From the NCBI GenBank assembly GCA_040357565.1, contig JBDODJ010000003.1: a stretch of DNA of 64,000 nt; one strand, written 5' to 3'. The notes beneath the pieces are model-generated. The model was not told where the DNA came from, ran no database searches, and saw only the letters and a program-made list of their open reading frames with translations. The position numbers were made by a program, and so were the translations under genes. This stretch comes from Cercozoa sp. M6MM. Its lineage: Eukaryota > Protista > Endomyxa: Ascetosporea. Positions 7,364 to 43,126 of this stretch are shown here, one piece after another. Numbering within the stretch: position 1 is the stretch's first letter; each line of letters starts with the position of its first letter.

Positions 7364-8443
7364 TTATTCGTGCAGCTTAACACTCTTCGATTTGGTGACA
7401 TCATGAGTCTGCCAAGCCGATATGGTGATACAATGTTTATCTATCTCAATTGTAAATTTACAGTCTAGGGCGCTAGCACGATTTCCACAGTCCTCTTTCG
7501 CATCCTCTCTCCCGCCTCTTCTTGTGACTGGCACTGACAGACTCGAGGATCCGCCTACGAGCATTCGGGTACCAACTGAAGAGATTGTGTCTTTTTGACG
7601 GTGCAAGAAAAGGTCTGAGTGCACCTGTAGTCGTTTATATCGAGCGCACATGGCACTGTTGCGCATCGTCTCGTACAACGCGTCGACGACGCCAATACAA
7701 AGATGTGCCATTTCGTGCAAGTTGTGGTCGTCGTGTTCATTGTACACATGGAGGTGTGCGTGTCCTGCCACCGGGTACTTTTTCCTACAGTACTCCTTCA
7801 TCGCTTGCACGGCCGCTTTGTCGCATCTCTCTTTGTGCGACACCTTCATGCCTGCAAAGCAACTGACTGCATCCCCTTTCATCAGTGAGTATGTGATATA
7901 CCAACGTGAGCACACTGCGAAACGTAGCACCTCAAGTGGTGTTGGCACACTCGTTCGAACTTGTGTTGCATTACGCTGAGAATGTGTTGGTAGCGGTACC
8001 TTTTTTGTCAGAACATCTGATTCTAAATAAGATACCTCGCGTGTCCGTGAATCCAGTGGTTCTCCACGCAATCGCCATTTGCCAACTCACCAGCAATTGT
8101 GTCCAGGTTCCTGCGCTCTTTGAACTCGGCGATATGGGAAATTGATGCGATGACCAAGTACCACGTATAATTGACGTGGACCAGTCGCATCGAGGTGTCA
8201 CCGTCGCACACAGTTTTCACGACATCCGACATCAGACACGGCGCGTGCGACAGGTGACCGTGAGCTAACAGGTGTCCATGATGCCACACAAAGTTTCCTG
8301 CCATTTGCAACCAGGAATTCATACGGCACGCACGGGAGGAATTGCAGCATACCCGTATTTGCAGGATTTGGGTATCGAAAACTTGAGGAGCCGTTGCACC
8401 ACTGTGCCAGCAACAAGATGCAAAACGCCACCGAGGTCATCAT
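7364..8443 (-). CDS. Hypothetical secreted His/Cys-rich protein containing an HExxH motif; spliced
   Basis: Hydrophobic N-terminus MMTSVAFCILLLAQWC; exons flanked by GT-AG; LHEMAH at about 7703-7720. No family recognised. Confidence 0.55.
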
Positions 8444-8605
8444 ACGGCCATATCACAGTCTTACCGCAGGGAACACGTCAAAAGTTGCTTGCTTTTCACG
8501 GCAGTAACCCCAAATGAGAAACGCTCCCGTCAATCACAATGCAAGCTGACTGAACGAACGAAGTACCGACCTTGAAGAAGATGTCGTCCTGGGGAACGTA
8601 AAAAC

Positions 8606-8676
8606 GGGAGTTGGATAGCTCCGCTTTAAGCGAGAGGTGGACTACGGCCATGCGCTTGTGACGTGACCACCCCAGG
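8606..8676 (-). ncRNA. Dispersed structured element, copy A (hairpin + pseudoknot)
   Basis: Minus-strand cctggggtggtcacgtcacaagcgcatggccgtagtccacctctcgcttaaagcggagctatccaactccc aligns with copies at 16768-16839 and 27552-27614. The repeat is certain; RNA function is inferred. Confidence 0.55.
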
Positions 8677-8895
8677 ACTGAGCTAACCAACTGACTGAAC
8701 GAAATGAAATTAAACGAACGGCGCGGAAGCGACGCGAAACGAAAGCTGCCGTGCACCGAATGTCGCGTCGCGTCGTGCATTAATCGGGTCTAACGCAACG
8801 ACATAACCTAGGCGAGGTATTTCGGTTGCAAACTGATGGATAAAAAGCTGCGCTGCCGTGCCGCTGCCATGCCGTGCGTGTCAGCGCGAGCGGGG

Positions 8896-9789
8896 TCACG
8901 AGTCCTCGTTCGACTCGTCGGCGGCAATCACAAACATGCCAGTGACGGCGTCAATGGAAGCAAGCGTTCGAGCCTCGTGCACACTGCCGCCGTCGTCGTC
9001 GCTGTCGAAGTCGTCGACGTGCTCGCTCTCGTGCTCCGTGGTCGACGTGAAATCCGACGCCAGCGAGCGAGCAGGCTGCACAACAAAAGGAAACTGATCG
9101 AAGCGGGCTGAAGTTTCTGAAACAGGTGCACACACCCTTCCGTGCGCATTGAGTGGCACAGCAGTCTCCACAGGCGATGCTGGCCTCGCGCTCCGTTTGT
9201 TCGTCTTTCGGTGGCCGTGCACGTCGCACTTGCCGAGAGCAATATACCGCAGCAGTCGCAGGATCTGCGGAAAACTCTTGCCGCGCGTTTCCGGCACCTG
9301 CAGACAGAGGAGTGCCAAGACTAAAACGCCGCTTAACAACTCAGGAGGCTACCAGTCGCAGCACGAACAGCACGCTCAGCACGCCGATCCAGAAGTAAAA
9401 GAAGAAGGCATTCTGCCACATCAGAGTGGAAGATAACGGGGATGGAGGGTAATGGGGTAGGGAGAGGAAAGAGTGGAGGGGGGGGGGGGGACAAGTGAAA
9501 CTACGCCATCGCCGAGGCCCTTGGAGAGCGAGAGGAAAGTGATGGCGACGAGGCCACTCGTGACGCGGTTCAGCGAGGTCGCCAGCGACATTGCGCGCCC
9601 GCGGATCTCCAACGGGAAGATCTCGCTCAGTAACATCCTTTCATGCACACATTATATAGATAAATAAAAATAAATCAACAAACAAGTAGATGTGCATATA
9701 TATATATATATATATAAATACAAATTAACGTATAATACATTTATATAAAAATGTACAAAAATTATACATAAACTATACAAAAACATAGA

Positions 9790-9823
<34 letters not shown>

Positions 9824-11725
9824 CCACACGACGGGACCCAAGCCGACCGAGAAGCCGATCATAAAGAGCGACATGGACGACAGCAACGCCAGCACCGGCA
9901 GCTCCAGCCAGAAGCACAGCGACAGCGCCAGCAGCGACACCGAACACATCGTCGTCGATATCAACTGCAACCGGCGGATAAAGGGCAGTGGGGAGGGGGA
10001 GAATAGAGACACACCAGCAGTCGCCGACGGCCAAAGTAATGATCAGCAGTGAAGGTAGCCACCAGTATGGTAAGTGTCTTGGCCAAGCCAACCACCAAGT
10101 TGGCCCGCAGTCGCGCGTCCAGCGACTCTAATCCCGCACGCTTCAAACTGTAGGGGGTTAAAGCGAGGTAAGGGATTAAGAAGTAAAGGGAGAGGGGTAT
10201 ATCAGCGCGCCTACATGGCAGGCGTGTAGTAGACGATGGCTTCGGAACCGCAGGCTTGCTGCAGAATGCCGATGCCACAGCCGAGCAGAACAATGTGTCT
10301 CAGCACCCTTGTTCGCGGACACTATATCCATACATACGTACATATAGTCCATGGTACAGTCCACATGTACAGTTCATATGTACAGTCCTATGTACCAGAA
10401 TGTCCTTCCATTTAAAGGAAGACTCAGCACGCTGCCGCTGCAGCACGTCGGCGGCGGCCTTGTCCAGCGCCGTCTGCAGCGTCACCGCGTCGCACCGATG
10501 CGTCCGCTGCATCGATGCCTCCGCCTGCCGCAGTTCGCCCTTGCTCACCTATCTCGGGGGGGGGGGAGAGGGGTAGGGGTAAGGAGTAAGGCGGGGTAAG
10601 AGGGGCAAGGGGTAAGGCCTACCAAGTAGTAGGGTGACTCGGGCAGCAGCAGCAGCATCAGCAGAATCACGCAACCCGGCGCTGCACCGGCGCCGAGCAT
10701 CCAACGCCAGCCCGTTTCCAGCGGCAACTCATTGTGCAGCAACAATGCCACACTACGGGGGGGGGGGGGTAAGAGGGAGATATATGGGTAAATGGACCTA
10801 CATGTATCCTAGCAAGATGCCGGCATTGATGCTGATTTCGGCAAAGGAAACGAAGCGGCCTCGTGCGCCTGGTGGACACAGTTCCGACACGTACAGTGGG
10901 GCCACCACACTACATGAGGCAAGGAGTAAAGGGAGCAAGGGAGTAAGAAGCTGCGATACATGCCACCACCGACGCCGAGACCCACGACACTGCACCAAAG
11001 ATCCACCATAGTTTACACCGCCCAAGTAAAAAAAGTCTGTGCATACATTCGACCCAGCAGAAGCATGCCGAACATTCGCGCACTCGCCATCAGCAGCGAG
11101 CCTCTACAGAAATACAAGCGATAAGGGGTAAGGGGTAAGGGTAAGGGTAAAGAGGGTAAAGGAGGGAACACACGCAATGAAGCACACAGCGCCGAAAGCA
11201 ACGCCGTTGCGACGACCGAAGTTGTCGGACAACTTGCCTGCCTACAAATACGTGTGTCCACGAGGGGTAAGGGGGAGGTAGGGGGTAAAACTACCACGAT
11301 AGCACCAATCGGTGCGACCAGGTTCATGCTGCCCATGATGACTTCCTTCTGCGTGTCCGTGTAGCCCTCACTCTGCACATAACTCACACCACAGAACTAC
11401 GGAGCTAAACCACCAAACAGTACCTGCTCGATGAGCTCAATAGCACCCGACATGATGCCAATGTCGTAGCCCAGCAGAATCTGCGAAAGCAACAGATAAG
11501 GAACAAAAGGCAGACAGGAGGGCAAGGCACACTCGACAGCGACGCCATCAGTGCGGCGACCCACATGAACTTTGTCGGCGACACATCGCGCAGGTCCGAC
11601 GACTGCCTTGCACACCGCATTAAGGCACTGACAGGAGTATTGTGAAGTTAGCAAACAGAAAAACGCACCGATTGTGAAGATCGCTGTGTCAACAACTGGG
11701 AACCTACATCGTCATCGACCAACAT
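8896..11725 (-). CDS. MFS sugar-porter family transporter (polyol/inositol transporter-like); many introns
   Basis: LLGYDIGIMSGA, DNFGRR, PLYVSELCPPGARG, EISINAGILLGY, WRWMLG, PESP, DHYFGRRRLL, SEIFPLEIRGRA and VPETRGKS signatures. Confidence 0.93.
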
Positions 11726-11984
11726 TGGGCCGAGAAACCTCGTGCTCCACCAGCTTTGTGCTAGTTACTGTGCCTAATGGTGCCTCACGGTAATTCTCGG
11801 TGCGTTAGAGTGATACTTAACTACTCTAACAACTCAAAAGGTCGCGCTCCACTTTGGCTACGGGAATGGCAAAGGGTTTTGCCGTTTTTTGTGCAAACTC
11901 AGCTTTTCGTGCAGGTATCGATAGGATTAAACAGGGTTAACATGACACTTCTTGGACGAACAGAAACAGCACGCGGCAGCTCGA

Positions 11985-14087
11985 CTAGTCGCGTGAGACG
12001 AGACCCGGCGAGTCGAGCACGGCATAGCCCTGAAAGGCAAGGGATAGGTGTGTCCCCTGGCAAAAAGGAAAACGCTCTGTACAGTGTTGACGCCGCCTTC
12101 GTTCACTCCGACGTGCTTGGTGCGCACAAGGTGGCCGCCGACGGCCTCACAGAGCACCGAGTCGGCGTCACTTACGATGGAGGAGAAGAAGCCGACTTCG
12201 TTGAGGCACTGCGACAGCACAGTCGAAAGGTTGCGTGTGTTAGTGAGTTAAGCAAGGAGTACCGGGCCTTCCGAAACGCCGCTGGCCGTGACCAGACAGG
12301 CCGTTCGTGGAGCCGGTCGAATGCGCTTCATGAGCACAAAGGCAGCTCGCTCACGCGGCGACAACTGACGCAGTTTCTCGACAGCGTCGGCGCCATAGAA
12401 GTTGCATCCGCCGCCTTCGCGCTGCGGCTTCAGCACGAAATCGTCGGGATTGGCAATCACGGTTTCCACGATCTGGTTGACTGCCTCCTCGCCGACCTGC
12501 CAGAGGGGTACAGTGTGCATTGTCTGTTCTGAATGGTGAATGATAGTAGTAGCCTACCTCATCGATACTGAGCGAGTACATTGGCGCAAAGAACGGCAGC
12601 AGTCGCTGCACCTCGTCGTTGGATAGGAAGCGACGCAGCACCGACGGCTGCGTCAGCAGCTGCTGTACCTTCTTGGTGCCGGCCAGCTGCGAGGCCACGC
12701 ACGGCACCAGCACGGCACTGCTGCGCTCCAGTGCCTGCCTCAAATACCGATAATCATACATATTTCTATAGACATCAATATATATATATATATATATATT
12801 GATGTGTGAGATAGACTGGAAGGTAAGGGTACAGCGCGTGCAGTCCACTCCTGCTCGGTTGGGTAGTCAACAGGCGTGTAGGCAGAGCGAAAGTAGACCA
12901 GCGAGGCCACACGGCCGTCAACTTCGACGTGTCCGTCGGTGTTAACCTGCAGCTGACCCAGTGGCACACGCGCGACATCGCAGCCCTCCTCACCTGCAGT
13001 TAAGCAAATAACACAAAGGCAGCACACAGAAAATTGACTGACCTGACTCGAGAAAGAATTGTAAGTGTCGCTGATCTGTCGCGTTTCGCTCTTCCGGTTG
13101 CACGACAAAGACGATCAAAGGACGGCCCTAACCCCAAAAAATTATGCAAGGTATACCCTAAACCATACAGGTGTATAGCACGAAGGTACAGAAAGCGAGT
13201 TGCGCTGAGCGTGCTCATAGGCAGCACGCTGCAGCAGCGCGAAGGTCCGCTGGGTTCCCTGCTTGGGCAGCAGCACGCCGCTGTCGCGGTTGCTGTGCAT
13301 ATGCCAGAGCGACACGCGCTGCGACAGGAAGGCGAAGGACGCTGCGATCGTGTTAAGCTCTACCTGCAGGAAGTGCGGTTTGCCCTCACTGTACAGAGTG
13401 TTTGTGTGGTTCCACATAATAAACATATTGCACATAAACTAAGCATTGTACGTAGGCACGTGCAGCATGTAGTCGGAGCGGAAAATGTTCGCGCGCAGCT
13501 GCTGCGGCTTCTCCGGCAAGCACTCGATCAGTTTGCGCTGTACACAAAGCCACGTGCAATCTTAGACGACATGTGCAGCAAGTATCCATACAGTGAACTC
13601 GTCAGTCTCTGCAACAGTGGCAAGAGACTCGCGAAGGAACTCTTCATCGCGCGAGACTCGATCATACCTGAACACTCGCACACTCCTTCCTAGCACCAAG
13701 AGCCATAAATAAAACGAGTACAGGTTGTTCAGCAGGTAAGACGCGTTCTGCGCATCGCAAAATCTGCGATTTAACAATGTAAACATTTAACTGAACTCAA
13801 ACAGCCCAATGAAAGTACGCTTCGGCCGGGAATTCTGTCGGGTACAACGAGAACGGTGCGTGCACCAAACTCTTGCCGTCTGGCGCTCCCTGTTGTCGCA
13901 AATTATGGCGTCACGACCAAGTTTTACAACTCAAAGTTCACATACCACTAGTAGGCCATTGCATTGCGCAAAGGCGCGCGCGTTCTCCACGAAAATGTCG
14001 TGCTTCGACTGAGTTTCCAAAAAGAAGAAATCAACTCACCACGGAGCAGCCTGATGCAATCGAAAACCCTACCGGCGCAGAACTCAT
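11985..14087 (-). CDS. GSS: Glutathione synthetase (eukaryotic type); spliced
   Basis: HAPFSLYP, FRSDYMLH, QVELNTIAASF, VYFRSAYTPVDY, QLAGTKKVQQ, FVLKPQREGGG, GHLVRTK…NEGGV…GYAVLDSP; start codon approximate. Confidence 0.95.
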
Positions 14088-14269
14088 ATGCTAAAGTTGC
14101 GCTCAAAAGTAGCAGCACGCGCTCGAGCACACTAAATCGGAATTTAGTTGAAGCGACTCTCACCGCGATGCCTACAGTAAGAGATCGAATTTAGACCAGA
14201 AATGGGCAGTACTGTACATTATAAATACGCTGTGCCTTGATCTGAGTGTTTGAAGGTCCTGCGTAGTGC

Positions 14270-14291
14270 ACGCGCGTATAAAACGCGTATA
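14270..14291 (+). promoter_or_regulatory. Tandem CGCGTATA with an ACGCGT (MCB-like) site upstream of MCM10
   Basis: acgcgcgtataaaacgcgtata about 90-110 bp upstream of the MCM10 ATG in the divergent GSS/MCM10 spacer; function inferred by analogy only. Confidence 0.3.
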
Positions 14292-14378
14292 GGGCAATTT
14301 TATTGCTCTCCAGTGCCGGCGAGGGTGCCAATTTTTCGCGTCGGTCATATCTTCTCTTCCGCGCGGTTCGGTCAGAGC

Positions 14379-16653
14379 ATGTCACTCGCCGAGCTTTTCG
14401 GTGAAGACGCCGCTAAAGACGAACGTGAAAAGCTGCTGTTGCGGAGTGACTCGGAAAGTGACAGCGACAGTGACAGCGACAGCAGCGATGATGAAGCACT
14501 GGTGAAGAAAACACCGTCGAAAGCAGCTTCAAACGCACCGCCAAAAGCGAAGGCTGGAGCTTCCACAAGTGATTTCCGAGCAGCTGACAGGCCCGAAAAG
14601 CCATTTAGATTGCCTGCTCCGTTTTCGCACCTTCGAATTCAGCAGCCTACACAAATTCCTCTGACGACGATTCGACTGGCACTGGCTCGCAACAAGTACA
14701 TTTGCTTACCTTTTTTGTCAGACTTTAGTTAAACCCAAGTGTACCTTTGGTTAGATGCGTGAGTCTCAAAGCCTCGTTCTCGGACTGGAAGAGGGCAGCA
14801 GCCGATCTGCCGCGGCCAGGCACGGTGGCGGCCAGGCGAAAGACGAAACCCGTGTCGCTCAAGTCGACGCTTGTTGGAGTTGTCGTCTCTTGCAAGAAAA
14901 AGACAAGTGCGAACGGCAGCTTGTTTTCAACGCTCGAATTGAGCGACTTGGCCGAGCAGGTAACATACTTGATTTATATAGTACTGACAATGAAGCATGT
15001 TCGTATGTTTCAGTCAACTCGGATAACGTGCTTCCTGCACCGTGCAGCGCAGTCGCGGTGGCAGGAGCAGCTGAAACCCGGTCTCGTTATTGCACTGGCC
15101 GCGCCGACTGTGGTTCCGCCTCGTGATGCCAAGGTCTGTTGTTTTAAAAGAATTAGAACCGATGAATTAGTTGAAGGTGCGTTTTTTACAGATGGATCGC
15201 GCCTCGTTCTCCGTGAGCGACGCACAGCAACTACTCGTGTTTGGTCCGTGCGCCGACTTTGCCTACTGCCGCGCAGTGGCTCAGCGCAGTGGTTTGCGTT
15301 GCCGCAACGCCGTCAATAGTTCGCTGTTTGAGTACTGCGACTACCACGCCCGGCAGGTACTTCCCATGTTTTGTATTACAGTACATTAGTTATTCTATAT
15401 CTTTGTGTTTATTTGTTATTCTATTTCTTATATTCCTATCTTATGTATATTGCTGTGTCAAATGTTGGCAGGAGCACAAAAAGTACAGCGCGCGCCGAGG
15501 TGCAGCGACGAGTCTCGGGACAGGCACGTACCAAGGACTGCGAGGCACCTCAAGCCGCGGCAAAGCCAACGCACCACGAGCCTTGAACGACACCGAGGCG
15601 CAACTCGAAATGAAGCGCTACCTGGGCAACAGGAGGCGTCCAGTCGGACAGAAGGAAATGTCGGTCGACCCGGGTCGCATGCAGGAGAAGATTCGTCGCT
15701 CGGACGAGACTGTGCGAGTCGTCGGAGTCAACGGCGAGGTGCGTTCTGTGCTCAAGGAAGACGCCATTCGTGAGCAAGCTGCGCTGCAGCGTTCCAGCGT
15801 GGCGCGACAGCGACTGGCGGCAAAGTTCAAGGCGTTGCAAAATGGCGATCAGTCGACTGAACGAGTAACAGACAGAGGGTCGACCTCAACGCCCTCTCGA
15901 TCGCGAACTGCCGCCTCGTCGAAAGCGACAACACCACTCGAACGCAAGCTCAGCAAGCAAGGCTTCGAAGGAGGCGGTCTCACACTCAAGCTCGATGAGC
16001 CTCCTGCAGCAACGACGAGTGTGCTCGGCAAACGCACGCAACGAGAGCAGCCGAAACAAGCCAGCACCGACATTGACATGAGCGACATCACCGGCTTTGC
16101 CAACGAAAGCTCGCGTGCCAAGAAGCTGCGCGCTGCCGCCAACGAGAAGCAGCTCAAGACGGCGCTGGGTCGAGTTTCGCGATTCGCGCGACACGTCTCC
16201 TTGCAACAACGTGAGAACATTCTGGTACCCTTGGATTTCACTGCTTGACTGATTCCACGACTGTCTAATATATGTGTGTATGTGCAGAGTGAACTGGACA
16301 CACTGGCCAAGGCCGACCGTGCCGAGCAGCGAATGCAGCGTGTCACAGAGTCCAAGGTGTCGTGCGTCAAGTGCCTCGACTGCGGTTACGTGCAACGCAA
16401 GCCGCGCCTGCTATGCAAGTCGCGCAATCACCAGCTCGCCTTTGGCAAGGCGACACTGCACCACTTTTTCTGCCAGGATTGCGGTCGCTCCGAGTCATGT
16501 TTTACCAAGCACGTGACGCACGCGTGTCGCGGCTGCGGCGGCCGGCGCTTCAAGAGCGGTGGCGGCGGTCTCCACAAGGTGCGACTCGACATCACGTCGC
16601 GTTCGCAGCTCTCCGAGATGAAGAAGACGTCCGGCGAGCGCTTCCTTCGCTGA
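14379..16653 (+). CDS. MCM10: DNA replication factor MCM10; spliced
   Basis: LRIQQP, OB-fold (GVVVSCK…FSTLELSDL…GLVIAL), CCCH zinc finger (CRAVAQRSGLRCRNAVN…YCDYH) and C-terminal Cys clusters (CLDC, CKSRNH, FFCQDC, CRGCG). Confidence 0.88.
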
Positions 16654-16767
16654 GCAGTGCCGTGCGGCATGTGCTTGAACAAAAAATTGACGTGAACGGA
16701 AACATATCCGAGTCCAGGCTCAACGGAAATCAACGGACCGGACTGTATGTATCACGTTTATAGAAAG

Positions 16768-16839
16768 GGGAGTTGGATGGCCCCACCCTAAGCGGGAGAT
16801 GGATGGCGGCCATGCGCTTGTGACCGGACCCATCCCAGG
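16768..16839 (-). ncRNA. Dispersed structured element, copy B
   Basis: Minus-strand cctgggatgggtccggtcacaagcgcatggccgccatccatctcccgcttagggtggggccatccaactccc, in the spacer between convergent MCM10 and TrmO. Confidence 0.55.
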
Positions 16840-17045
16840 TACCGTACAGGGAACGGGAATTCGAAATGAATTTAAGTTACATAACGTAAGTTGGTTTCTT
16901 AGTAGACTGAACTAACTACTGTAGTTGTACTTGTACGGTAAGGTAAGTTTAAACAAAAATACGCGCACGGCACGAGCAGGCTTGCCGTGCGTTGGAAGTT
17001 CGGTTGTTTTGTGTGCATTCGTGTCGAAATCCACGATCACTCGGC

Positions 17046-18862
17046 TTACTCACACTCCGGCTCGCACTCCATCGAATGTTGCGCCACATATTCCTGCAGT
17101 TCGTGCAGCCACTGCTTCGAGCGTTGCCTAAAGTCAGCACCGCGATTACTTGGCTGCGTAGAATAGCGTAGCACACGGAACATACGGTGTTTGCGTTGCC
17201 CTCTCGTGCCTCACACGAACTACCTGTGAGATAGAAACTCAAAACACAGACCCTGAAGACACTAGAGAAATGTGCCGTGAACGTAAGCGGATTCGTGTTG
17301 ACTTGGAAATCAACTAAAAGCGAGTCGATTGAGAGACCGTAGTACGCGCCATCTGCGTCTCAATTCGAGTTGAAACTTATCACACAGAACAAGACAAAAA
17401 GTACCTCCATGGTTGGCCTTGGAGTGAGCCGTCCGACAATCCATTTTCAACGTGTCATTGATGACATTGTGTGCTTCTTGCGCACTCGTCAATAAATCAA
17501 AGTCGGTCACTCTGCACACACAAAGCACAGTGACCTCAACTAGCAAGAAACAAGGTCAGACGTACTGATGCAGCTGCTGCAACGCCAATGGATGCCATTT
17601 GACCAATGCAGTATCAATTCCTAGAAGGGCATCATTGGAGGGCAGCCATGTCGGGTACTTGACTTGCTGAGGGACGTCACTCGGATGAACGGGTTTAACG
17701 TCCTAAATGAACAGCCCATACGCTACAAGGAAGTCACTTTCGAGGCAAAAGTGGTCCTACAATGACTGGCGTGCCATCGACAAGATCAACGTTCTCCAGG
17801 TGCAAAGTGTTGCCTTCGATACTTTTTATTTTGACCAACGAAAGGCCCTGTTTAAAAAGAGGCATAGACACACCAAACATGGAGTTGAAAAGGCGTAAAA
17901 CAATTGGATTCGGTCGGTGCGGCGAACGACTCGCAAAAACGCCGATTTTGTGCTCGCCATTGAAGCGTGGTGCTCGTACCTTTGTGCACATTGTTTCTTC
18001 TACCCGAGTCAAGGCGGCCCGAATGAAAACTGACCATACCAGAGAACGAAGAGACGATGTTTTATTTGTCGCATCAAAATTCGCGTTGCGATCAAAGAGG
18101 AACAAGAGCCAACTGAAGGAGTACAAGCGGGTAAACTGGGGACAAGGGAGGTACAAACAAACAAAGTCACCAGTGTGAGTACTGCTCGAGTGATCGCAAG
18201 GCAGTGGGATCAAGATCGGGACTCAGGGTGACACGTGCAGGCCCACTGCACAGACTGCCCTGACGCGGACAGCCGAACTTCTCCCTCCAGATTGAGTGCA
18301 CTGCGCAGTTATCTAAACTTACTTACACACTGCTGTTTAAGTGTTAAGCACCTTTTCCGATGGGTCGAACCGAAAAGTGTTCCGAGTCGCTGTTGTTTTG
18401 ACTTTCTTCGTGTTCTGGCTCCCTCTGTGCTTTTGGAAACAAAAGGACGACAAGGCTGAAGGTGGAACTTGAGTACCTCATGCGACACAAACTGGATCAG
18501 AGGTCCGCACGTGCGAACAGAGTACCCGTGATTGTTTACTTCAGCATCAACAGCACGTGCCAACTGAGTGGCGACTGCGAAATGCCAATACAGATAAAAG
18601 AAAAAGAAGCAACATTTCAGGCCAAAGTACAATCGGCCAGGTCGCGTTTCCTTCGCCCTTCTTCCTGCAGGAAAAATGCGACTGGCGACTCAAAATCTGC
18701 GCCTTTTTTGGGTATCCGCAGCTGCAAAATATCCAACATTCCATAGCTACACCTGCCCTTGTTGCACAATCGTACGAGTGGTTCCACGTTGCGGCCTGTC
18801 TGTTGTTTGACTGCGCCCGCCAAAATTCGACTGAGCGCGCGTTGCGCTTTGGCCTTTGTCAT
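17046..18862 (-). CDS. TRMO: tRNA m6t6A37 methyltransferase TrmO/TsaA; spliced
   Basis: RPIGK|[29 protein letters not shown]…[14 protein letters not shown]|[13 protein letters not shown]|DVKP; both ends approximate. Confidence 0.9.
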
Positions 18863-19019
18863 TTAAGGGGTATTAACATGCACATGCGCATATCGTTGCA
18901 TCTAATTATTGTGCGTCGCACTCATTATTTTGTGATCAAACACTGGGGTGCTTCGTTGCCTGAGCTTAAAACAGGACCCAGGCGTGTGTGGTTACTGCGT
19001 AGGTTTTAGGGGTGATACC

Positions 19020-20395
19020 ATGCGCTTGATCGCTCCACTGTTTGTTTTCGCTGCAGTGGCCAGGTAGTGTGCATCATTGGAATAGCGTACTTGCGCTAAA
19101 GGAGTACGGGAAACATCGCTGTAGCGGACAGCGAACGGGTGCCCCTGTGGGCGATTACGACGTGCTTGTGCTGTCGCAGTCATGGCAAACCACGTTTTGC
19201 TGTGCTTGGTAGCACCACCATTCGACATTGGTTGTGTGGATAGTATCTACTGTATTTTTGTTTATCAATGAGCAGTCCCGATGCGATGGAGTGCTCTGCC
19301 TACGACGAGACTCACGTAGCGGCCTCTGAGTTGTCGCTACACGGTCTGTGGCCCAACTACGACGATGACGGTATAGTTATCTGGCCCTTTTGACCTTGTC
19401 TCTCGTTAGCACGGCTTTCTGCTGGCACAGGAGAGCAGCGAACCGGCCAGATGTACCCGCAGTTCTGCGACGTGTGGGCACGTTGCTTCTTCGACATGTT
19501 CCGGTGGTCGAGCTCGTGCGCAGTATCAGACCAAGTGCTAAACAAGTACAGCGATGACTTTGGTAGCCTTTATTTTTTATGGATATACTTATATAGTATA
19601 TAGTAATAATGATATCATAGACAGACCAGTATGCTCCTGGCTACGCACGCGAAGACAACGCCGCGGCACACCACGAGTTCCAGAAGCATGGCACTGTACA
19701 CATGTCAAGACACTGTTGTTGTAGGTGCTGTTGGTCTACTACACTTCCACCTGCAGTGCATGCCGATTGATGCCGATGCCTTCTTCGAGGAGAGCTTCCG
19801 CGCGCACAGACGAATGCCGACGCCTGCCGTGATTCGCACCAATGTCGGCAAGACAGTACTTTGTCTCTCTGTTGCCGGCCCGTCTGATGAGTATTGCAAT
19901 ACAGTATGTTTAATGTCAGGTGTCGCTGAGTGCCCTGCAAGAGGCCTACGGCGGTGCTGACTCGGTGGGCATCTCCTGCACCTCCGAAGGCGACCTGGAC
20001 CAAGTTTTCACGTGCTACGCGCCTTCATTCGACAAGTCACGCCTGGACTTCCGCGTCAACTGTCCGCGCAACCTACTCAAGAGTGCCTACACCAACGGGT
20101 GCCACGTCAACGGACACGGCACTGTGCGCATCCCACTCGCTACGGTAGTACTCCTGCCTCCCTTCTTTTAGACTTTCCTTTAAGTTTTACCTCCTCTAAC
20201 ACAACACACTTCATGTGTAGAAACAATGCGACGAGCATCATTTGCGCCAGAACTTTGTCTGTGAAACTGTACCGTTTGATACTTCAATTTTTATTGTACT
20301 TTAAATGTACCTATCTCTTGCTTTTTTGTGCAGATGCCGCCAAAGCCCACTCGAACTCGCCAACGCATGATTTACTGAGGTTACTGGGGTATTGA
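19020..20395 (+). CDS. Secreted ribonuclease T2; spliced
   Basis: Signal MRLIAPLFVFAAVA, DYDVLVLSQSWQTTFC, CAS I LHGLWPN and CAS II HEFQKHGT|C; last exon uncertain. Confidence 0.9.
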
Positions 20396-20663
20396 TTGCT
20401 GAATACACACCTCAGCCTGCGCTGTCAGTTGGCATCGAATCCGTCAACTCCGCCCGAGTTCGCTTTCGTTTCGTTTGTCTTCACGACGCCCGAACGCTAG
20501 ATTTGTTTTTGTTCTGAACGCAGCCTGTCTCAACGTGGCACAGGCACCACGAGCTTCCAACCGGCTCAATACCTTGTTTATTTTGGCTATACAGGACTGT
20601 ACTAGTTCAGGTAGTGTGCGCAGGCGTGTGTTAGTACCGTTTGCACCACCTTAGTACATCTGG

Positions 20664-23600
20664 ATGGATCAAACGAGCGAATCCGAGCTGGCAGCCCAGC
20701 AGTCATTGCTGGAGCGCTCGATTGCCGCGTCACCTTTCGAAGCTTACGATACGCGCGGTATCGTCGCTTTTCCTAATTTGCCTGCTCCGGATTTTGCATT
20801 TTATTGAATGGTAGTCGCGTTGGTACAAGTGCTTTGGCAGCGCGGCGATGTCAATGGTGCCAGGTAATTTATTTCTGTATTTTGCTACCTTGAGTCGCCA
20901 TCCCTGGTTTGCGCAGGAAAGCGATGCAAGAACTGCACCAATTGCATCCAGTGCACGCAGCTGCCTGGCTGAAAACCATTGAAGCCGAGAAGGAACTCGC
21001 TGACGCAACTGTTTGTTTTTCCCAATCGTTTTTGATGAGTAGTGTTAATTAAATTGTTGACACTTTTTAGGCCGAGTTGGGCGAGGACTCCGACTCAGAC
21101 TCGGAAGACGAAGACATGAATGACGAGGATGTTGGCACTGCTTCGTCGCCCTACGACACGGTTCTGCACCAGTGTGATCTGGCATTGGTAGGTTACAAAC
21201 ACTTCTGTGAAGACACTGTGTTCTGTGAATGGAGGTTTTTGTACTGCGGCAGGATGACTACGCCGACGCCAATATCGCGCTGCAAATGCTCAAGATTGCA
21301 CGGATTTCGACGAAACTTGCGCTTCAGAAGATTCGCCGAATGGTGTGTATTCTCCAGTTCTTCTTTTACTGCTGCTTGTGTTGGGAAATACAAAATGCAG
21401 AAGGCGCCCGACGATGCGAAACAAAGCAAAGTTGACGAAATTCTTGAACAATTGCGTTCGCGTGAAGGTTTCACTTCTTTTATAGTTTCGATCATTACAT
21501 TGTGACTATTAAATCTGAGTTATTTTTGAATTTTACTGTATTTTTGAAAGTTTCGCTCGGATAAGTTTGTTTGGTTTGTTGACAAAGACGAGGCTCTGCG
21601 AAGGGTTGGAAGAGACTTCCGTCGCGGTCACGAAGTGTTCGAAGCCGTACGTGCGCTGGAACAAGAATTCGGCACGCCTGTATACTTGCTCCTCTATCTG
21701 TGTGTTTCATCTATTGAACTTTTTTGATTGTTTGACGTGCAGGAGAATGTTCTGCAAGTCTACAAACGGCAGTTCGCGAGTGCTTTTGTTTTCGGTGCTG
21801 GAAATGACCTCGTAAATTATATTCATTCGATTTTTTAGTTAATCCACGTACTTTTGTTTGTGTTTTAAGCAGAAAAAGGCGACGGAACTGGCACAGCAGC
21901 ACAGTCTTGACTCGGAAGCCTTGACTGAACTGTTCGCAAACAACGAAAAAGTTACTGAATTCGTGAGCGAACTCGAAACTCAGCTCGGAGAACCTGGTTT
22001 GTTTTGCAGTCGTATCCCTCCTTGTGACTTTCCAACTTTATCCTGCTGTTTGAAGAGGCGAGTGCACCTGGTGCTCCGTCGGAGGAACGAGTGCAGCGGT
22101 GGCTACAGCACTTGCAGTCGGTGCAGCAGTCGCCGCACAAAGCTCTGCAAAAGTTCTCGCAGTTCGAGGCGCTTCTCGCTCGCTTCAACTCTGAGTGTAT
22201 TGCCTTTTTACCCCCTGCCCTTTGCTTCCTCACTTTTTTTGCTTTACCCTTTACCTTTTACCATTTTACCCTTTGCATTTCACCCTTTTACCCTTCGCCC
22301 TTTACGTTTTACCTTACCGTTCCTTGCAGGCTTTCTGTGGCCGCAGACGTGGCAGCGCACGCTCGAGTACCTGCAGCGCGAGTGCACGCTGCCGCTGACG
22401 CAGCTGTATTTGCCGCTGTTCCGCGCGGCCACGCGTGCCGTGCGCAACACGCCGCAGTACGTCTATGCGTGGCAGTGTCTGTTCGAGGCACTCGCCATGC
22501 CGCGTGCCGCCTCGCTGTCGCCTGGTAAGCACCGTCCCACTCACCTGGTCACACTGACTCATCATATGGTCACTGAGCACCGTCGCATGTGCGCAGAACT
22601 ATGTCCGCCCACGGTGCGATCGCACTGGACGCGCGTGCCACTGGCCGAGCTGTCTCCAAGCGACGAGGTCGAGGTCGCGCTGCGCGAGGGCGTCGCTGTC
22701 TTTGCACGTGCAGGTACTTTATGGCTCGCATGTGTGTGACTGGTGACTGGTGACTGGTGAATGGTGACTGATGACTGATGTGTGACACGTGTCCAGGTGC
22801 GCAAGACGGTGTGCTGTCGGTGGCATTGGCCGCCTGCGTGGCACTGCGCCGACTGGAGCACGCGTGTCCTCAGTACGCTCTCGTGTACGCCGTGGCGGCG
22901 TTGCAGAACACGCAGCCCACTTCGGTATTAATTCTCTCTTGTTAAGGGTGCGTTTTCTCTTTGTTACGGTCGCATTGGCATCTGGGCAATGCAGACTGTT
23001 TTTGATGACACGAAACTGCCGAAATTTACGCCGACGGATGTCGCATTCGCTTTTTTCAACGCGTGGATCGATTTGCTCGTCGATCTGCATCACGCCGCTG
23101 GTTTATCCCTCTTTACTTCCCCTCTTTACTTCCCTTGTATACCCCCTTCTTACCCCTCTTACACCCTCTTTACTTTTTACCTCCTGTACCCCTCCTGTCA
23201 CACTTGGACACAGAGGAAAGTGACTACTTGGAACAAGCGTCGAAGATTCACACGTTGCTGACTCGCTTGTTTCCCAAGGTGCCCCTTGTTTTACCCCCCC
23301 CCCCCGTACCTCTTTACCCCATGTTTGTTCACTGGTTGATTGAGGTCGCAGATGCCGACAGTGTGGCAAGCGGCGGCGCAGTTCGAAACGACGCTGCGCG
23401 CCGATTACAAGGCGGCACGTGCCATCTACAAGGTGGGCTTTACCCTTTACCCCCTCTTACTTCACCTCTATACCCCTCTCTACCCTCTTCACCCCCTCTT
23501 TATCCTACCATTTGCAGAAAGCAGTGAACGCAGCAGTGACGTCGGAAGCGTTGGCGACTGTTGCTGTTGAGGTACACTTTACCCTCTACCCCTACCCGCT

Positions 23601-25547
23601 ACCCCTCCCGTTTACCCCGTGCCCTTTTCCCCCCCCCCCCCCCCCCCGACAGTGGCGTCGCTTTGAACAATCGCACGGCGGCGTGTCGGATGCGCGACTG
23701 GTTGACACGCGTCTGCAGGAACGCCAGCGCATTCTGGCGCGGTACTTTTCCCCCCATATCCCTTACCTTCTTACNNNNNNNNNNNNNNNNNNNNNNNNNN
23801 NNNNNNNNNNNNNNNNNNNNNNNNNNNNNNNNNNNNNNNNNNNNNNNNNNNNNNNNNNNNNNNNNNNNNNNNNNCCCCCAGGAAGGAGAAAAAGACGAAG
23901 CGCGGCCGAGCGGAGATAACGCCGAAAGAAAGCGACGCCGACGAACGCGAAATTCTGCGCGAGATGCGGCGCAACCTCCAGTTGCGTGCCGAGCGGTACA
24001 CTTAGCTTGCCCAGTTGGCACGTGCCAGGGACCAATCGATCACTGAGTGATCAGTCAGTGATCAACTGCGTGTGTATGTTTTGGGGTCAAAAGGGACCGT
24101 CTGCAGCGCGAGCGACAGGCGCAAAAGTACCTGCCGCAGCAGGACGAAAAAATCGACGAATTGGCGCCGGAGAACGTCAAGCGCGCGCGTCATGGCGACG
24201 GTAATTACACCTCCCCTACCCTACCCCTACCCTACCCTCTATCCTACCCCTACCCCTACCCCTACCCCCTATCCTACCCCTATCCCTACCTCTACCCCCT
24301 TACCCCTACCCCTCTTACCCCCTTACCCCAGAGCGAGCGAAGCCAGCTGCAGGCGTGAGCGACAAGCACACGGCCTTTGTGTTCAACCTGCCGCCCGAGT
24401 GCGACGACACGGCGCTGCTGCAGTGGCTGCACATGCAGGCCAGCGACCGCAGCAACGGCGCCGTGCCTGACGTAGGCTTGTTTACTCCCACCTTTACCCC
24501 TTACCCTTACCCCTTACCCTTACCCCTTACCCTTACCCCTTGCCCCTTGCCCTTGCCCCTTGCCCCTCGCCCCTTACCCCCTACCCTTACCCTCCGGTAG
24601 ATCCACAAGGCACTGCCGCACGGCGAGAGTTTCGCCGACCACAGCACGGGCATCCGCATCCTCAAGCAGCGCGGCGGCGGCAGTCGCGGCCAGGCCTTTG
24701 TGGACTTCGAGACGGCCGAGTGGCGCGATGCCGCCGTCGCTTCGCTGCACGGACGTCTGCTGCACGACCGCGCTCTCCAGTGGGTGCTTTACCCCCCTCT
24801 TTACCCTCACCCCTTTATCCCTCTACCCCCACCACTTTACCCCCACCCTTTACCCCCACCCTTTACCCCGGTGGTAGCGCCGCGGCCGCGGCACGGGCGA
24901 GCAGAAGGACGTAACGGCGTCCGCGCGGACGTTGTACGTGGCACACACGCCGCGTCGCAGCGCCGATCGCGACATCCGCGCGGCCATGCAGGCGCTGCTG
25001 GCGCTGCGTGACCCGGAGGCCACCATGGACTTTGGCAAGGTGGAGGTACGCCCCGTGTATCTACCCCTATGTTCCCTCTTACTCCTCTTACCTTCTCTCC
25101 CAGGTGATCGAAGTGCGGCAAGGAATGACGCGCTCGGGCGACTTCAAGCCCTTCGCCTACGTGGAACTGGGCGACGCCGCGGCCGTGTCGCACGTGCTCA
25201 AGATGGCGGCGCAGATGGCGCTGCGTGGCACACCGCCGCAGATCGACGGCGTCACACTCGAGCTGCGCAAGTACGAACGCGGCGGCCGCAAGAAACGCGA
25301 GCGACGCGCGCCGACGCGACCGGTTCGACGGCCCAAACATGGCTTTGCCAGTGTTGTCAAGTTCGACAAGAAGGACAAGAAGGACAAGAAGGACAAGAAA
25401 GACGAGAAGGACAAGGCCAACAAGGGCACTAAGGCTGCTGAGGACAAGACTAATAAGGAAACTAAGGTCGATGACGCCGGTGCCATGCGCGATGATGAGT
25501 CGCCCAAGCCGCGCTCCAACGCCGACTTTGCCGCGCTCTTCTCCTGA
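20664..25547 (+). CDS. SART3: SART3/Prp24-like U4/U6 recycling factor (HAT repeats + 2 RRMs + LSm-binding tail); many introns, spans a gap
   Basis: HAT-like segments (WQAAAQFE…ARAIYK, WRRFEQSHG), RRMs (TAFVFNLP, RGQAFVDF, KPFAYVEL) and the C-terminal SNADFAALF motif. Confidence 0.85.
23775..23874. other. Assembly gap (100 N) inside a C-rich intron
   Basis: Run of N. Confidence 1.
24213..24328 (+). repeat. Intronic telomere-like (CCCCTA/CCCCTTA)n repeat
   Basis: Degenerate ccctaccctacccctac… tract between a GT donor and a CAG acceptor. Confidence 0.85.
24480..24595 (+). repeat. Intronic (CCCCTTA)n / (CCCTTG)n repeat
   Basis: ccccttacccttaccccttacccttacccc… fills the intron. Confidence 0.85.
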
Positions 25548-25955
25548 GTTTTGCTAGCCAAAAGTCAATACAGTTTAACGAACGACCAGCGATAGCGGTT
25601 CTTTTAGTGTTGGTGACTCAGTGTAGCCCATGATGTGGACATACCACGCTTCTTTCATGCAGGAAACAGAAGTAGCTTTTCTCCGCACAGAAGTGATTGG
25701 ATCCTCATCTTGACCGTTGATGCTTGTCCATGCATTACTGCTATCAGGGTCGAAGGTAGAACAGTGTAGAGGGGGCCTCATACCAGCTGGTGGTCAAGCA
25801 TTCCTACTTGATCCGCCTTAAGATTGAGTGCCTACATTTATCGCGTTTTTTTGGCTTCCAGCGCTCTGGAGTGCCCCGTCACTGCACTACAGCCAGATTT
25901 TGCCCAAGTTTGCTCACCTTCTACCCAACTCTGCTCAACTGCTCGAGTCTGCTTG

Positions 25956-26039
25956 GTTCCGGAGTTTGCTCAAGTTCCGGAGTTTGCTCAAGTTCCGGAG
26001 TTTGCTCAAGTTCCGGAGTTTGCTCAAGTTCCGGAGTTT
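25956..26039. repeat. Intergenic minisatellite, 18-bp unit, about 4.7 perfect copies
   Basis: (gttccggagtttgctcaa)x4 plus gttccggagttt; degenerate flanking copies; no spacers. Confidence 0.95.
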
Positions 26040-26332
26040 CGTTCGGAGTGCCTCGGACCTATCTTAACATTCGAGCCGCATAGTTTAAAGTCTGTACGAA
26101 CTGAAGGCGGCGGAGTGTTAAATGTCAGGGCCGAGCGATTCCGTGAGCGTCGCGAGCCTGCCAAAAATAACCGGACGCGAAACTTCGCCGCTGTGCCGCG
26201 CGTAAGGAACGCTTCGCCGACTCTTCGAGAGCGAGAAGGAGAAAGTCGCACTGCTCACCAATTAGCGAGATCAACTCGAGGTCGACAAGCGTGTTCTGCA
26301 ACTTTGAATCGACAGTTTCGCTCAACACGCTC

Positions 26333-26932
26333 ATGGACTGGCAGACCGATCAGAAGACTTTGTCAGACGAGTTGCAAGCGACCGCGGCTGAAGTTGAACG
26401 TCTCCGAGAGGTCGTGACTCGCCTCTAAGACCGTGAGCTGCTGTCTGGAGGAACAGGGTGCACCTATGAAGCAGAGCTGCGCCTCTTAGCGCAAATGAAA
26501 GACGACGACGCCTCTGTGCGTTCTGACTATGCGTCCACCGGTTGTGGCAGAGCGCCTATGAGCGCAACTAAAAGATGGCGATGCCTCGACTCCGACTACG
26601 TGTTGCGTCCCGCGTCATACAGATTGACGGAGTTACGCATCAAGATGCTGTGCGACTTAATCGCATCTGTCGCTCGCCAGGTAACAATTTATGAATTCAG
26701 TGGGCTTTAATTAATGAGTTTTGTGTCTGTTTGACTCCCTCTAGAACTTGTCCTGCACGGCGTGAACTGCCTGCATCAAGTGCACGATGCTGGCCTTCCT
26801 GTGCTGGAGTACATTCAGCAGGCCGACAGAGTCACTCCTTTGCTCTGGGAGCACGTGCCAGAAGTTCAGGAGCTCCGACCACAAGTTCACCTGCAAGAAC
26901 CTTCCGCAAGTTCGTTGCCTGCATGGGTGTAG
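26333..26932 (+). CDS. Small hypothetical spliced gene (coiled-coil N-terminus)
   Basis: MDWQTDQKTLSDELQATAAEVERLRE followed by plausible GT-AG introns; exon joining ambiguous. Confidence 0.35.
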
Positions 26933-27090
26933 GTACGCGTACAAGTTGAAGTCCGACAAGTGCAAGAACCGTCTGTCATCTCTGATCTGGGAGTGAAATC
27001 GGTGCCTCCATTAAATTTTACTAAGTATCGTGTTTCGATACATTTTTATTGTTTAAAGCAAATAAGTTTAGTTGTCCGTCCCTGCTTTGA

Positions 27091-27240
27091 TTACTTACCT
27101 GGAACCTTATGATTCGCATCAAAAAGGAGTAGTATCTCGTTGCAGTTTGCGAACCGGATGCGATACTCCAGTCGACTGAGTAGTAACTTATAGCGTGGAT
27201 TTTACCGATATCGTACCGTATGTAAATTTATGTAGGTCGT
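27091..27240 (+). ncRNA. U1 snRNA-like sequence (divergent gene or pseudogene)
   Basis: tacttacctgg 5' motif, catcaaaaag in a stem-loop at the U1-70K loop position, gttgcag loop and aaatttatg Sm-like site; SL2-SL4 spacing atypical. Confidence 0.3.
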
Positions 27241-27321
27241 TAATTGGCAAATTAATCAGAGTTAATATTGAACGAAACTGAACGGAATCGATTTGAAGCT
27301 AAAAGAATGCGGAGCTTGTGC

Positions 27322-27472
27322 TTATTCAACAAGAACAACAACGATCTCGAACTCGCAGTCGTCGATCTGCTCGGGCTTGCGCATGATGAGCTTGTCGGCG
27401 TCGATGCCGTCGACGCACTCAACGATCGGGAGACGCACGCTGCCGGCGACCTCCTGCGCCTTCCATGCCAAT
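27322..27472 (-). pseudogene. Duplicated 3'-terminal ~150 bp of the IleRS CDS
   Basis: [46 protein letters not shown] versus the gene's [46 protein letters not shown] (28124-28264). Confidence 0.85.
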
Positions 27473-27551
27473 TTTGGTACTCGCCCTTCCTTAAGCACTG
27501 TTTCTTTGATTTTCATTCGCTCCTGCAAGCTAGTTAGTTAGTTGAGTCTGT

Positions 27552-27614
27552 CCGGGGTGGGTCATAAGAGCATGGCCGTGTCTACCGCCCCCGCTGAGGG
27601 TAGGACCACACAAC
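27552..27614 (+). ncRNA. Dispersed structured element, copy C (more diverged, opposite orientation)
   Basis: ccggggtgggtcataagagcatggccgtgtctaccgcccccgctgagggtaggaccacacaac aligns with copies A and B. Confidence 0.45.
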
Positions 27615-28123
27615 GAAGTCGACTTCATGGTTGGTGCAGGTAGCGGGCTACAAGTAGAGAGGCGTCGCAGGCGGCGTCGGGTCGTCCCGTCGTCGCCCTC
27701 TCATCCCTGCACTCGATAACTAACAAACAAACGGACATAGACTTAAGGCCATCCATCACTGCTATGAGTGATGGCCTAGTCTATGCCGGGAACCTCTCGG
27801 TCCAGTGCCTGCTGCTGGGACGCTGGTTGTCTTTTGACAGTTGCTTCCTCGTCCCAGCCGGGGTTGGCCAGTGTCTTCAATTGTGCGCCATTGGGCTTCT
27901 GATAAGCTTCCGTCTAAAAGCCAACGAGCCTCCAAACCAGCCAGACGAGAACCCTTTGCGCTAAACCCGCCAATTAGGCACAACCTACGAAGCCGCTCTA
28001 CCGGCCTGCCGGACGACGAGGCGGAGCACCACGACACGAAGGAAACTAAGTCAAATGTTACCGTCGCGTACCGCAGCCTTTAGTAATATCGTTTCTTAAC
28101 ATAAAGGAACAACGAGCTCGAGT

Positions 28124-42707: not shown

Positions 42708-43126
42708 ACCGACCACGCGCGTCTATTCGGGTTGCAGTAGTTGCGTTAACCTGGCGTTGTTTCAGTGCATTTATTCGATTTAGCAATTCAATCGTAACTG
42801 TCGTTCCCCCCGCCCTGTTGACCCACCTAGACTGGTGCAGGGGGAACTATCTCGTTGTTTTCCTATAAGACTCAACTAACTAACGAACTCCCCCGCCCTG
42901 TTATATATCTGTCGTGCTCGACATTTCTAACGTCAATTGTCACCGCGTGGCGGTACTGCGTAAACTTACTGAAGCAAAGCAAAAATTGCCAGAGCTTGAG
43001 TCTAGACGCCGTTGGCAGTACCTATATACAGTATCTACTGTACAATATCTATGGACGCGATAGCGTCTTTTGCGTTGCAATGCTGTTAGTACAATGGTGT
43101 TGGTGAGACGGGAAACGATTGCCGTC

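What the first reader, a model, noticed from the sequence alone, without database searches (positions are those of the whole stretch)
8606..27614. Unannotated ~70-nt intergenic element in three copies with a conserved hairpin and pseudoknot
Seen: copies at 8606-8676 (-), 16768-16839 (-) and 27552-27614 (+) share GGG(G/A)TGG…GTCA(C/T)AAG(C/A)GCATGGCCG…C(T/C)CGCT…CAAC. In that orientation the 5' G-rich arm pairs with the downstream arm despite substitutions (ggggtgg/ccacctc; gggatgggt/atccatctc; ggggtgg/ccgcccc). GTCA/TGGC closes an 8-nt loop, and loop AAGCG is complementary to CGCTT just 3' of the stem in A and B (only partly in C), giving an H-type pseudoknot. The stems contain G-U pairs that would be A-C mismatches on the other strand, which points to an RNA-level structure on that strand. 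All copies are intergenic and within a few hundred bp of a gene 3' end. Inference: a new structured RNA family (3'-end processing or stability element, ribozyme, or SINE-like element). By eye it does not fit HDV, twister, pistol, hammerhead, tRNA, 5S or SRP-Alu consensus.
Basis: partly seen in the sequence, partly recalled or inferred. Interest (0 to 1): 0.85.

Follow-up and report, generated by a model that had tools for sequence, protein, structure and literature searches.

The report
Truncated LINE retrotransposon 3' tails
The three "structured RNA" copies are dead, 5'-truncated insertions of a LINE-type retrotransposon, seen from the wrong strand; this is ordinary mobile-element debris, though the tail probably does fold into a hairpin that the element's own reverse transcriptase uses.

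Summary
The repeat is real. The three copies exist, and there is a fourth partial copy at 42820-42889. The shared 18-mer occurs 3 times against 0.23 expected by chance.

It is not a free-standing RNA gene family. It is the inner part of the roughly 300-nt 3' UTR of a non-LTR retrotransposon (LINE), read on the antisense strand.

- **Coding capacity:** long copies with the same end are about 5.06 kb. They carry one ORF of about 1530 aa with APE endonuclease, reverse transcriptase and RNase H.
- **LINE hallmarks:** copies share one 3' end, ...GACTCAACT followed by (AACT)1-4. They are 5'-truncated at 70 to 2539 nt from it. Short copies have 10-16 bp target-site duplications.
- **In the window:** copy A has a 13-bp duplication and copy D another.
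- **Lineages:** there is an old one (copies A and B, 75-85% identity) and a young one (copy C, 93-98% identity, with uninterrupted ORFs elsewhere in the genome).

A different, nested rod-like hairpin has two lineage-level compensatory pairs. It also has mismatches that become G-U pairs only on the LINE sense strand. This fits an RT-recognition tail, which is inferred, not shown.

Other first readers of this scan had already noted this LINE family elsewhere in the genome. Interest is low.

The parts
8559..8690 (+). Copy A (old lineage). It is 5'-truncated at the base of the big hairpin, and its last ~50 nt are replaced by a degenerate tail.
   Evidence: nhmmer hit 8561-8680. BLAST to the full-length LINE L067 at 7017-7102, 77% identity. 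Boundaries come from the flanking duplication.
8546..8558 (.). Target-site duplication of copy A, left copy (CTGACTGAACGAA).
   Evidence: Exact 13-mer found only at 8546 and 8691 within 8400-8800.
8691..8703 (.). Target-site duplication of copy A, right copy (CTGACTGAACGAA).
16763..16919 (+). Copy B (old lineage). LINE tail, sense strand +. It is 5'-truncated inside the hairpin, carries a ~30-nt insertion, and ends ...GACTGAACT AACTA.
   Evidence: nhmmer hit 16763-16924. Terminal motif at 16887-16913 plus tail. No target-site duplication was found.
27530..27896 (-). Copy C (young lineage). Sense strand is -. It holds the last ~165 nt of ORF2 plus the 3' UTR, with a ~35-nt internal deletion near the 3' end and an (AACT)3-like tail at 27530-27544.
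   Evidence: BLAST to L067 6684-7100 at 81% over 340 nt. tblastn of ORF2 residues 1467-1530 onto 27913-27779. Sequence read directly.
42820..42889 (+). It is the terminal 70 nt of the young-lineage LINE plus its tail.
   Evidence: nhmmer hit 42819-42888. BLAST to L067 7086-7151 at 88%. Flanked by a target-site duplication.
42807..42819 (.). Target-site duplication of copy D, left copy (CCCCCGCCCTGTT).
   Evidence: Exact 13-mer at 42807 and 42890.
42890..42902 (.). Target-site duplication of copy D, right copy (CCCCCGCCCTGTT).

Best explanation
The element is the 3'-terminal part of the 3' UTR of an APE-type non-LTR retrotransposon (LINE). The full element is about 5.06 kb with a single ORF of about 1530 aa encoding endonuclease, reverse transcriptase and RNase H.

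The window copies are dead insertions made by target-primed reverse transcription.
- The element's RNA is copied from its 3' end, an (AACT)n tail, into a nicked target.
- Copying usually aborts early, which leaves 5'-truncated fragments flanked by target-site duplications.
- Copies A and B belong to an old, decayed lineage. Copies C and D belong to a young lineage that still has uninterrupted ORFs elsewhere in the genome.

- P1: CUGYACCA with UGGURCAG.
- P2: GUC(C)UGGGG with CCCCAG(G)AC.
- P4: AUGGYC with GGCCAU.
- P5: CYACC with GGURG.

It most likely serves as the recognition structure that lets the element's reverse transcriptase pick its own RNA, as in 'stringent-type' LINEs.

Shown: LINE identity, common 3' end, truncation, tail, duplications, and strand of the ORF. 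Inferred: the hairpin's role in RT recognition.
For: 1. **Terminus is the most abundant part.** The terminal 27-mer has 198 genomic hits. All reversed controls give 0.
2. **Long copies are LINEs.** It has Exo_endo_phos (2e-9), RVT_1 (8e-26) and RNase_H (2e-4, 21.9 bits against Pfam's 25.8-bit cut-off; 25.6 bits in L048). Two copies align over 5058 nt at 97.5%. ORF2 fragments give 81 matches, some with open frames of 1547-1569 aa. Nearest Atlas clusters have the same three domains.
3. **Variable 5' truncation.** Twelve young copies share the 3' end but stop at 75, 75, 78, 79, 101, 140, 162, 162, 907, 1735, 2253 and 2539 nt from it. The old lineage shows the same gradient.
4. **Repeat tail.** The 3' end is ...GACTCAACT followed by 1-4 AACT units, then unrelated flank.
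5. **Target-site duplications.** Exact 10-16 bp duplications of unrelated sequence flank six short copies elsewhere and window copies A and D.
6. **Old-lineage link to the ORF.** Old-lineage copies L018 and L039 have RNase H-like remnants upstream of the tail in the right orientation.
7. **Structure.**
   - The nested hairpin has 32 cells with changes on both sides against 15.6 expected; 0 of 500 shuffles reach that.
   - This is driven by two lineage-level swaps, C-G to U-A, at columns 14-187 and 76-100. There is also a matched 1-bp deletion in both arms of P2.
   - The whole UTR folds with z = -4.3.
8. **UTR conservation.** Between lineages the 3' UTR is about 66-80% identical in most segments, while the last 150 nt of ORF2 is 51-59%.
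9. **Precedent.** A 3'-tail stem-loop is required for and recognised in retrotransposition of stringent-type LINEs (PMC1636434, PMC4176376).
Against: - No RNA data could be obtained, so neither transcription nor strand is shown directly.
- Covariation rests on only two master lineages, which means two or three independent events. Dead copies decay neutrally and add noise.
- RNAalifold on a gappy 40-sequence alignment found almost no consensus structure, at -2.1 kcal/mol.
- As an inverted repeat in DNA, the hairpin folds nearly as well on both strands.
- Copy A lacks the normal last ~50 nt. Copies B and C show no target-site duplication.
- The LINE clade was not assigned.
Confidence: 0.9

Rival explanations
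1. The short ~160-nt copies are a separate, non-autonomous SINE-like family. It consists of, or ends in, the LINE tail and is mobilised in trans by the LINE's reverse transcriptase.
For: - About 16 old-lineage copies and 2 young copies (L043 and L047, 162 nt each) stop near the same point, the base of stem P1.
- SINEs that share their partner LINE's tail are well known (PMC1636434).
Against: - There is no common 5' head, and no tRNA, 5S or 7SL-like part.
- Some apparently 'short' copies continue with deletions, for example L013 and L008.
- Truncation points also cluster at about 75 nt and spread out to 2.5 kb, as expected for aborted reverse transcription at a strong hairpin.
- Old-lineage long forms run on into RNase H-like sequence.
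Confidence: 0.07
2. This is an independent family of structured non-coding RNA genes or ribozymes on the reader's strand, with the hairpin and H-type pseudoknot as drawn.
For: - The proposed stems pair in 85-95% of cells.
- There is no Rfam match, so it would be new.
- The sequence is conserved between lineages.
Against: - There is no covariation: 1 cell with a change on both sides, and 476 of 500 shuffles do as well. The covariation score is 0.111 against a shuffled 0.112.
- The second pair of the outer stem is G/G in most copies.
- The central pseudoknot pair is lost in the whole young lineage without compensation.
- The minimum-energy fold on either strand does not contain these helices.
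- Every LINE hallmark is present.
Confidence: 0.02
3. In the old lineage the tail is conserved because it encodes the C-terminus of ORF2. The ORF would run to the TAA inside the (AACT)n tail, so no RNA structure is needed to explain the conservation.
For: - On the sense strand, the majority sequence of old-lineage copies reads as an open frame ending at the terminal AAC TAA. This was a manual translation, not a tool result.
- Some copies keep 100-120 aa open through the UTR (L031 and L028).
Against: - In the young lineage ORF2 stops about 310 nt upstream of the 3' end.
- The two lineages differ by 1-nt indels inside the most conserved core.
- Frames differ from copy to copy.
- The compensatory stem changes are not expected from coding constraint.
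Confidence: 0.04

Closest known systems
Stringent-type LINE 3' tails, such as eel UnaL2 and zebrafish ZfL2 (PMC1636434, PMC4176376)
   Same: - A conserved stem-loop lies in the last ~100-200 nt of the 3' UTR.
- It is followed by a short tandem-repeat tail rather than poly(A).
- The tail is kept between lineages while upstream sequence diverges.
- Many 5'-truncated copies exist.
   Different: - The repeat unit here is AACT and the hairpin is much longer, about 120 nt in several tiers.
- The ORF carries an RNase H domain.
- No partner SINE was found.
- Recognition by the RT is inferred here, not tested.
RNase H-bearing APE-type non-LTR retrotransposons, a domain order found in several LINE clades such as I, Tad1 and Ingi (clade list from memory)
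   Same: One long ORF has APE endonuclease, RT and RNase H in that order. Target-site duplications and a simple-repeat tail are present.
   Different: The clade was not assigned because no reference phylogeny was run. No separate conserved ORF1 was seen: the two upstream 'ORF1' frames are unrelated flank except for their last ~60 aa.
SINEs that borrow a LINE tail
   Same: They are short, dispersed, intergenic and retroposed, with the partner LINE's 3' end.
   Different: There is no Pol III-type head and no fixed 5' end. The copies are simply truncated LINEs.

Membership tests
Non-LTR retrotransposon (LINE) insertion | Long copies encode a reverse transcriptase and an endonuclease | tested here: met
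   RVT_1 at 8e-26 and Exo_endo_phos / Exo_endo_phos_2 at 2e-9; RNase_H at 2e-4 falls just under Pfam's curated cut-off (21.9 against 25.8 bits). All lie in a 1530-aa ORF that ends ~310 nt before the shared terminus.
Non-LTR retrotransposon (LINE) insertion | Copies share one 3' end and are 5'-truncated at variable points | tested here: met
   Copy lengths run from 75 to 2539 nt, and 5061 nt for full copies, all measured from the same 3' end. The old lineage shows the same gradient.
Non-LTR retrotransposon (LINE) insertion | 3' end carries poly(A) or a short tandem repeat of variable length | tested here: met
   One to four AACT units follow ...GACTCAACT in about 50 copies.
Non-LTR retrotransposon (LINE) insertion | Target-site duplications of variable sequence flank the insertion | tested here: met
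   Exact 10-16 bp duplications flank 6 of 8 short copies elsewhere and window copies A and D. None was found for B or C.
Non-LTR retrotransposon (LINE) insertion | No terminal inverted or long terminal repeats | tested here: met
   The two ends of the consensus are not inverted repeats (by eye). The inverted pair of hits in L043 consists of two separate truncated copies of 162 and 75 nt, the second with its own target-site duplication.
Stringent-type LINE 3' tail (RT-recognition stem-loop) | Conserved stem-loop near the 3' end, kept by compensatory change | tested here: inconclusive
   There are two lineage-level compensatory pairs plus one paired indel, and 0 of 500 shuffles reach the observed count. 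However only two lineages are available, and RNAalifold on a gappy alignment gave no structure.
Stringent-type LINE 3' tail (RT-recognition stem-loop) | Tail is required for, and bound in, retrotransposition by the element's own protein | not testable with these tools
   This needs binding or mobilisation assays.
SINE | Pol III promoter head derived from tRNA, 5S or 7SL, with a fixed 5' end | tested here: not met
   ARAGORN found none. Rfam found none at gathering or at E<=1. The 5' ends are variable.
Known Rfam RNA family or ribozyme | Match to a covariance model | tested here: not met
   There were 0 matches at gathering threshold in the window. In four loci only a chance SCARNA7 hit appeared, at E 0.26 on a GT repeat.
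   The covariation score equals the shuffled mean, and the central pseudoknot pair is broken in 17 of 37 sequences.

The most novel reading that the evidence does not exclude
The ~120-nt multi-tier hairpin is the specific RNA handle by which this RNase H-bearing LINE's reverse transcriptase recognises its own transcript. The clusters of truncation points at about 75 and 162 nt from the 3' end mark where reverse transcription stalls on it. Alternatively they mark a tail-only RNA that is mobilised in trans as a minimal SINE. Either way this would be a new, unusually large example of a stringent-type LINE tail, in a small intron-bearing eukaryotic genome.
Probability: 0.4. Interest if true: 0.25.

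Novelty: new member of a known kind. Interest (0 to 1): 0.12.

Why it matters
Mainly as housekeeping.
- A high-scoring "new structured RNA or ribozyme" lead is explained as retrotransposon debris.
- About 200 further loci in this 23.6-Mb genome can be masked or annotated with the same model.
- The young lineage has uninterrupted ORFs and 93-98% identical copies, so the family was active recently and helps explain the fragmented assembly.

The tail hairpin is a reasonable subject for studying how a LINE reverse transcriptase picks its template, but that principle is already established in other LINEs.

Tried and rejected
- **Introner or splice-site reading.** In one orientation the unit starts GTAC... 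and has a CTAAC near the end; in the other it ends AAG|GT. I dropped this once the unit proved to be the end of a longer ORF-bearing element with target-site duplications.
- **DNA transposon or MITE.** A +/- pair of terminal motifs 3.5 kb apart in L043 looked like terminal inverted repeats. They are two independent truncated copies.
- **Helitron end.** A hairpin followed by CTAG in the long form is the first hairpin of the 3' UTR, just after the ORF2 stop.
- **Coding readings of the core on either strand.** Frames are inconsistent between copies.
- **A conserved ORF1.** The two upstream ORFs are unrelated flank except for their last ~60 aa.
- **Other ORF-bearing lineages with divergent tails, for more covariation power.** All ten fetched were young-lineage copies with frameshifts.
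- **RNAalifold on a 40-sequence MAFFT alignment.** It gave no useful consensus.
- **Organism.** It was not identified. The protein Atlas gave domain architecture only.
- **Deliberate omissions.** No full-length consensus of the element was built, and no copy is singled out as functional.
Full report
**Observation.**
The shared 18-mer GTCAYAAGMGCATGGCCG occurs exactly three times in the window against 0.23 expected, and no shuffle reaches three.

The window is contig C3:186001-250000 of a 23.6-Mb, 2235-contig, intron-bearing eukaryotic assembly. BLAST of copy A finds 22 places genome-wide. A 27-nt core finds 36 places within three mismatches, and none for the reversed control. So the repeat is real and dispersed.

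The assembly gap at 23775-23874 lies kilobases from every copy and plays no part in the finding.

**The unit is larger than described.**
Aligning copies with their flanks shows similarity over about 160 nt. In some copies it extends 300 nt or more further on one side. A profile search adds a fourth, partial copy in the window at about 42819-42888.

The other end is ragged.

**One end is far commoner than the middle.**
- A 27-mer from the sharp end has 198 genomic hits.
- A 27-mer nearer the ragged end has 25 hits.

Many of the 198 belong to a very uniform subfamily. Fetching twelve of them showed that they share the same end but continue inwards for very different lengths, up to 2.5 kb.

**The long copies are LINEs.**
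That protein has 81 scored matches in the genome, several inside open frames of 1547-1569 aa.

Two such copies (L067 on C25 and L068 on C32) align over 5058 nt at 97.5%. Each carries one ORF of about 1530-1567 aa with Exo_endo_phos, RVT_1 and RNase_H. The nearest Atlas clusters have the same three domains.

The ORF stops about 310 nt before the shared terminus. The upstream "ORF1" frames of the two copies are unrelated except for their last ~60 aa. I therefore read them as flank read-through, not as part of the element.

**Hallmarks of target-primed reverse transcription.**
- **Common end and tail.** On the sense strand every copy ends ...GACTCAACT, or ...GACTGAACT in the older type. This is followed by one to four AACT units and then unrelated DNA.
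- **Variable 5' truncation.** Twelve young copies are truncated at 75, 75, 78, 79, 101, 140, 162, 162, 907, 1735, 2253 and 2539 nt from that end.
- **Target-site duplications.** Six of eight short copies examined elsewhere have exact duplications of 10-16 bp with unrelated sequences.

In the window:
- Copy D (42820-42889) is flanked by CCCCCGCCCTGTT at 42807 and 42890.
- Copy A (8559-8690) is flanked by CTGACTGAACGAA at 8546 and 8691.
- Copies B and C have no detectable duplication. B is old and carries an insertion.
- Copy C (27530-27896, sense on the - strand) includes the last ~165 nt of ORF2. It has a ~35-nt internal deletion near its end.

**Two lineages.**
Copies A and B belong to an old lineage, 75-85% identical to one another. 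Copies C and D belong to a young one, 93-98% identical, with uninterrupted ORFs elsewhere in the genome.

Old-lineage copies also come in graded lengths. Two of them (L018 and L039) have RNase H-like remnants upstream of the tail in the right orientation. They are therefore truncated LINEs too, not a separate small element.

Between lineages the 3' UTR is about 66-80% identical in most segments. The last 150 nt of ORF2 is 51-59% identical, close to what unrelated sequence would give in such an alignment.

**Structure.**
No Rfam family matches, either at gathering threshold or at E<=1.

- They pair in most cells but show no covariation. There is one cell with a change on both sides, and 476 of 500 shuffles do as well. 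The covariation score is 0.111 against a shuffled 0.112.
- The second pair of the outer stem is G/G in 26 of 35 sequences.
- The central pseudoknot pair is unpaired in 17 of 37 sequences, including the whole young lineage.

Minimum-energy folds on either strand do not contain these helices. Instead they give a nested rod of four stems, P1, P2, P4 and P5. Counted the same way:
- It has 32 cells with changes on both sides against 15.6 expected, and 0 of 500 shuffles reach that.
- This comes from two lineage-level swaps, C-G to U-A, in P1 and P5. There is also a matched loss of one base from each arm of P2.
- This amounts to two or three independent events. It is suggestive, not proof.

A young copy folds at -53.5 kcal/mol on the sense strand against -49.8 on the other.

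**Mechanism.**
Shown: these are retroposed, mostly dead LINE 3' ends.

Inferred: the conserved tail hairpin plus the AACT repeats is what the element's reverse transcriptase recognises and primes on. This has been demonstrated for stringent-type LINEs such as UnaL2 and ZfL2 (PMC1636434, PMC4176376). Truncation points cluster at about 75 and 162 nt, inside and at the base of the hairpin. That fits reverse transcription stalling there. A tail-only SINE-like derivative is the main alternative, and I give it under 10%.

**Comparison and verdict.**
This is a new member of a known kind, a LINE family with a structured, repeat-tipped 3' tail. The clade was not assigned.

Other first readers of this scan independently noted an RNase H-bearing non-LTR family with a structured tail and (TAAC)n ends elsewhere in this genome. 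I confirmed those features myself. One note reads the tail as a separate small element targeted by a LINE. The graded truncation series argues against that.

Interest is low. The value lies in retiring a "new ribozyme" lead and in giving a model that annotates about 200 loci. In keeping with the tools' notes, no full-length consensus was built and no copy is proposed for revival.

Noticed in passing
window 27914-27997 (+): An 84-nt piece matching the 5' end region of the LINE (L067 2154-2237, 79-82% identity) lies next to the truncated 5' end of copy C, in the opposite orientation. This could be a twin-priming-type inversion or a second insertion.
   Followed up: partly
window 27779-27913 (-): This stretch translates to a decayed LINE ORF2 C-terminus (residues 1467-1530, 48% identity, E 8e-5).
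   Followed up: partly
L046 (C1:423483-432483) 5698-7008: An internally deleted LINE derivative. Element positions 1-430 are joined to 4145-5047, giving about 1.3 kb with both ends and no ORF. It may be a non-autonomous form.
   Followed up: no
L007, L060, L034 (loci on C34, C750, C564): Several tails abut or nest in other copies' tails in inverted orientation, joined at the AACT repeats. Most duplications start with TA.
   Followed up: no
The Rfam scan of the whole window at gathering thresholds found no family at all.
   Followed up: partly
L067 6849-6872 and homologous positions in old-lineage long forms (L002, L028, L012): A perfect 9-bp hairpin lies directly after the ORF2 stop. Its arm sequences differ between lineages but stay complementary (CCACCGCC... 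against CCACCACT...). This is a second conserved UTR stem.
   Followed up: partly
window introns, e.g. around 2800-2900, 9760-9800, 57140-57200: Long TA/TATACA-type microsatellites translate as YIYIYI runs inside apparent introns of several genes.
   Followed up: no
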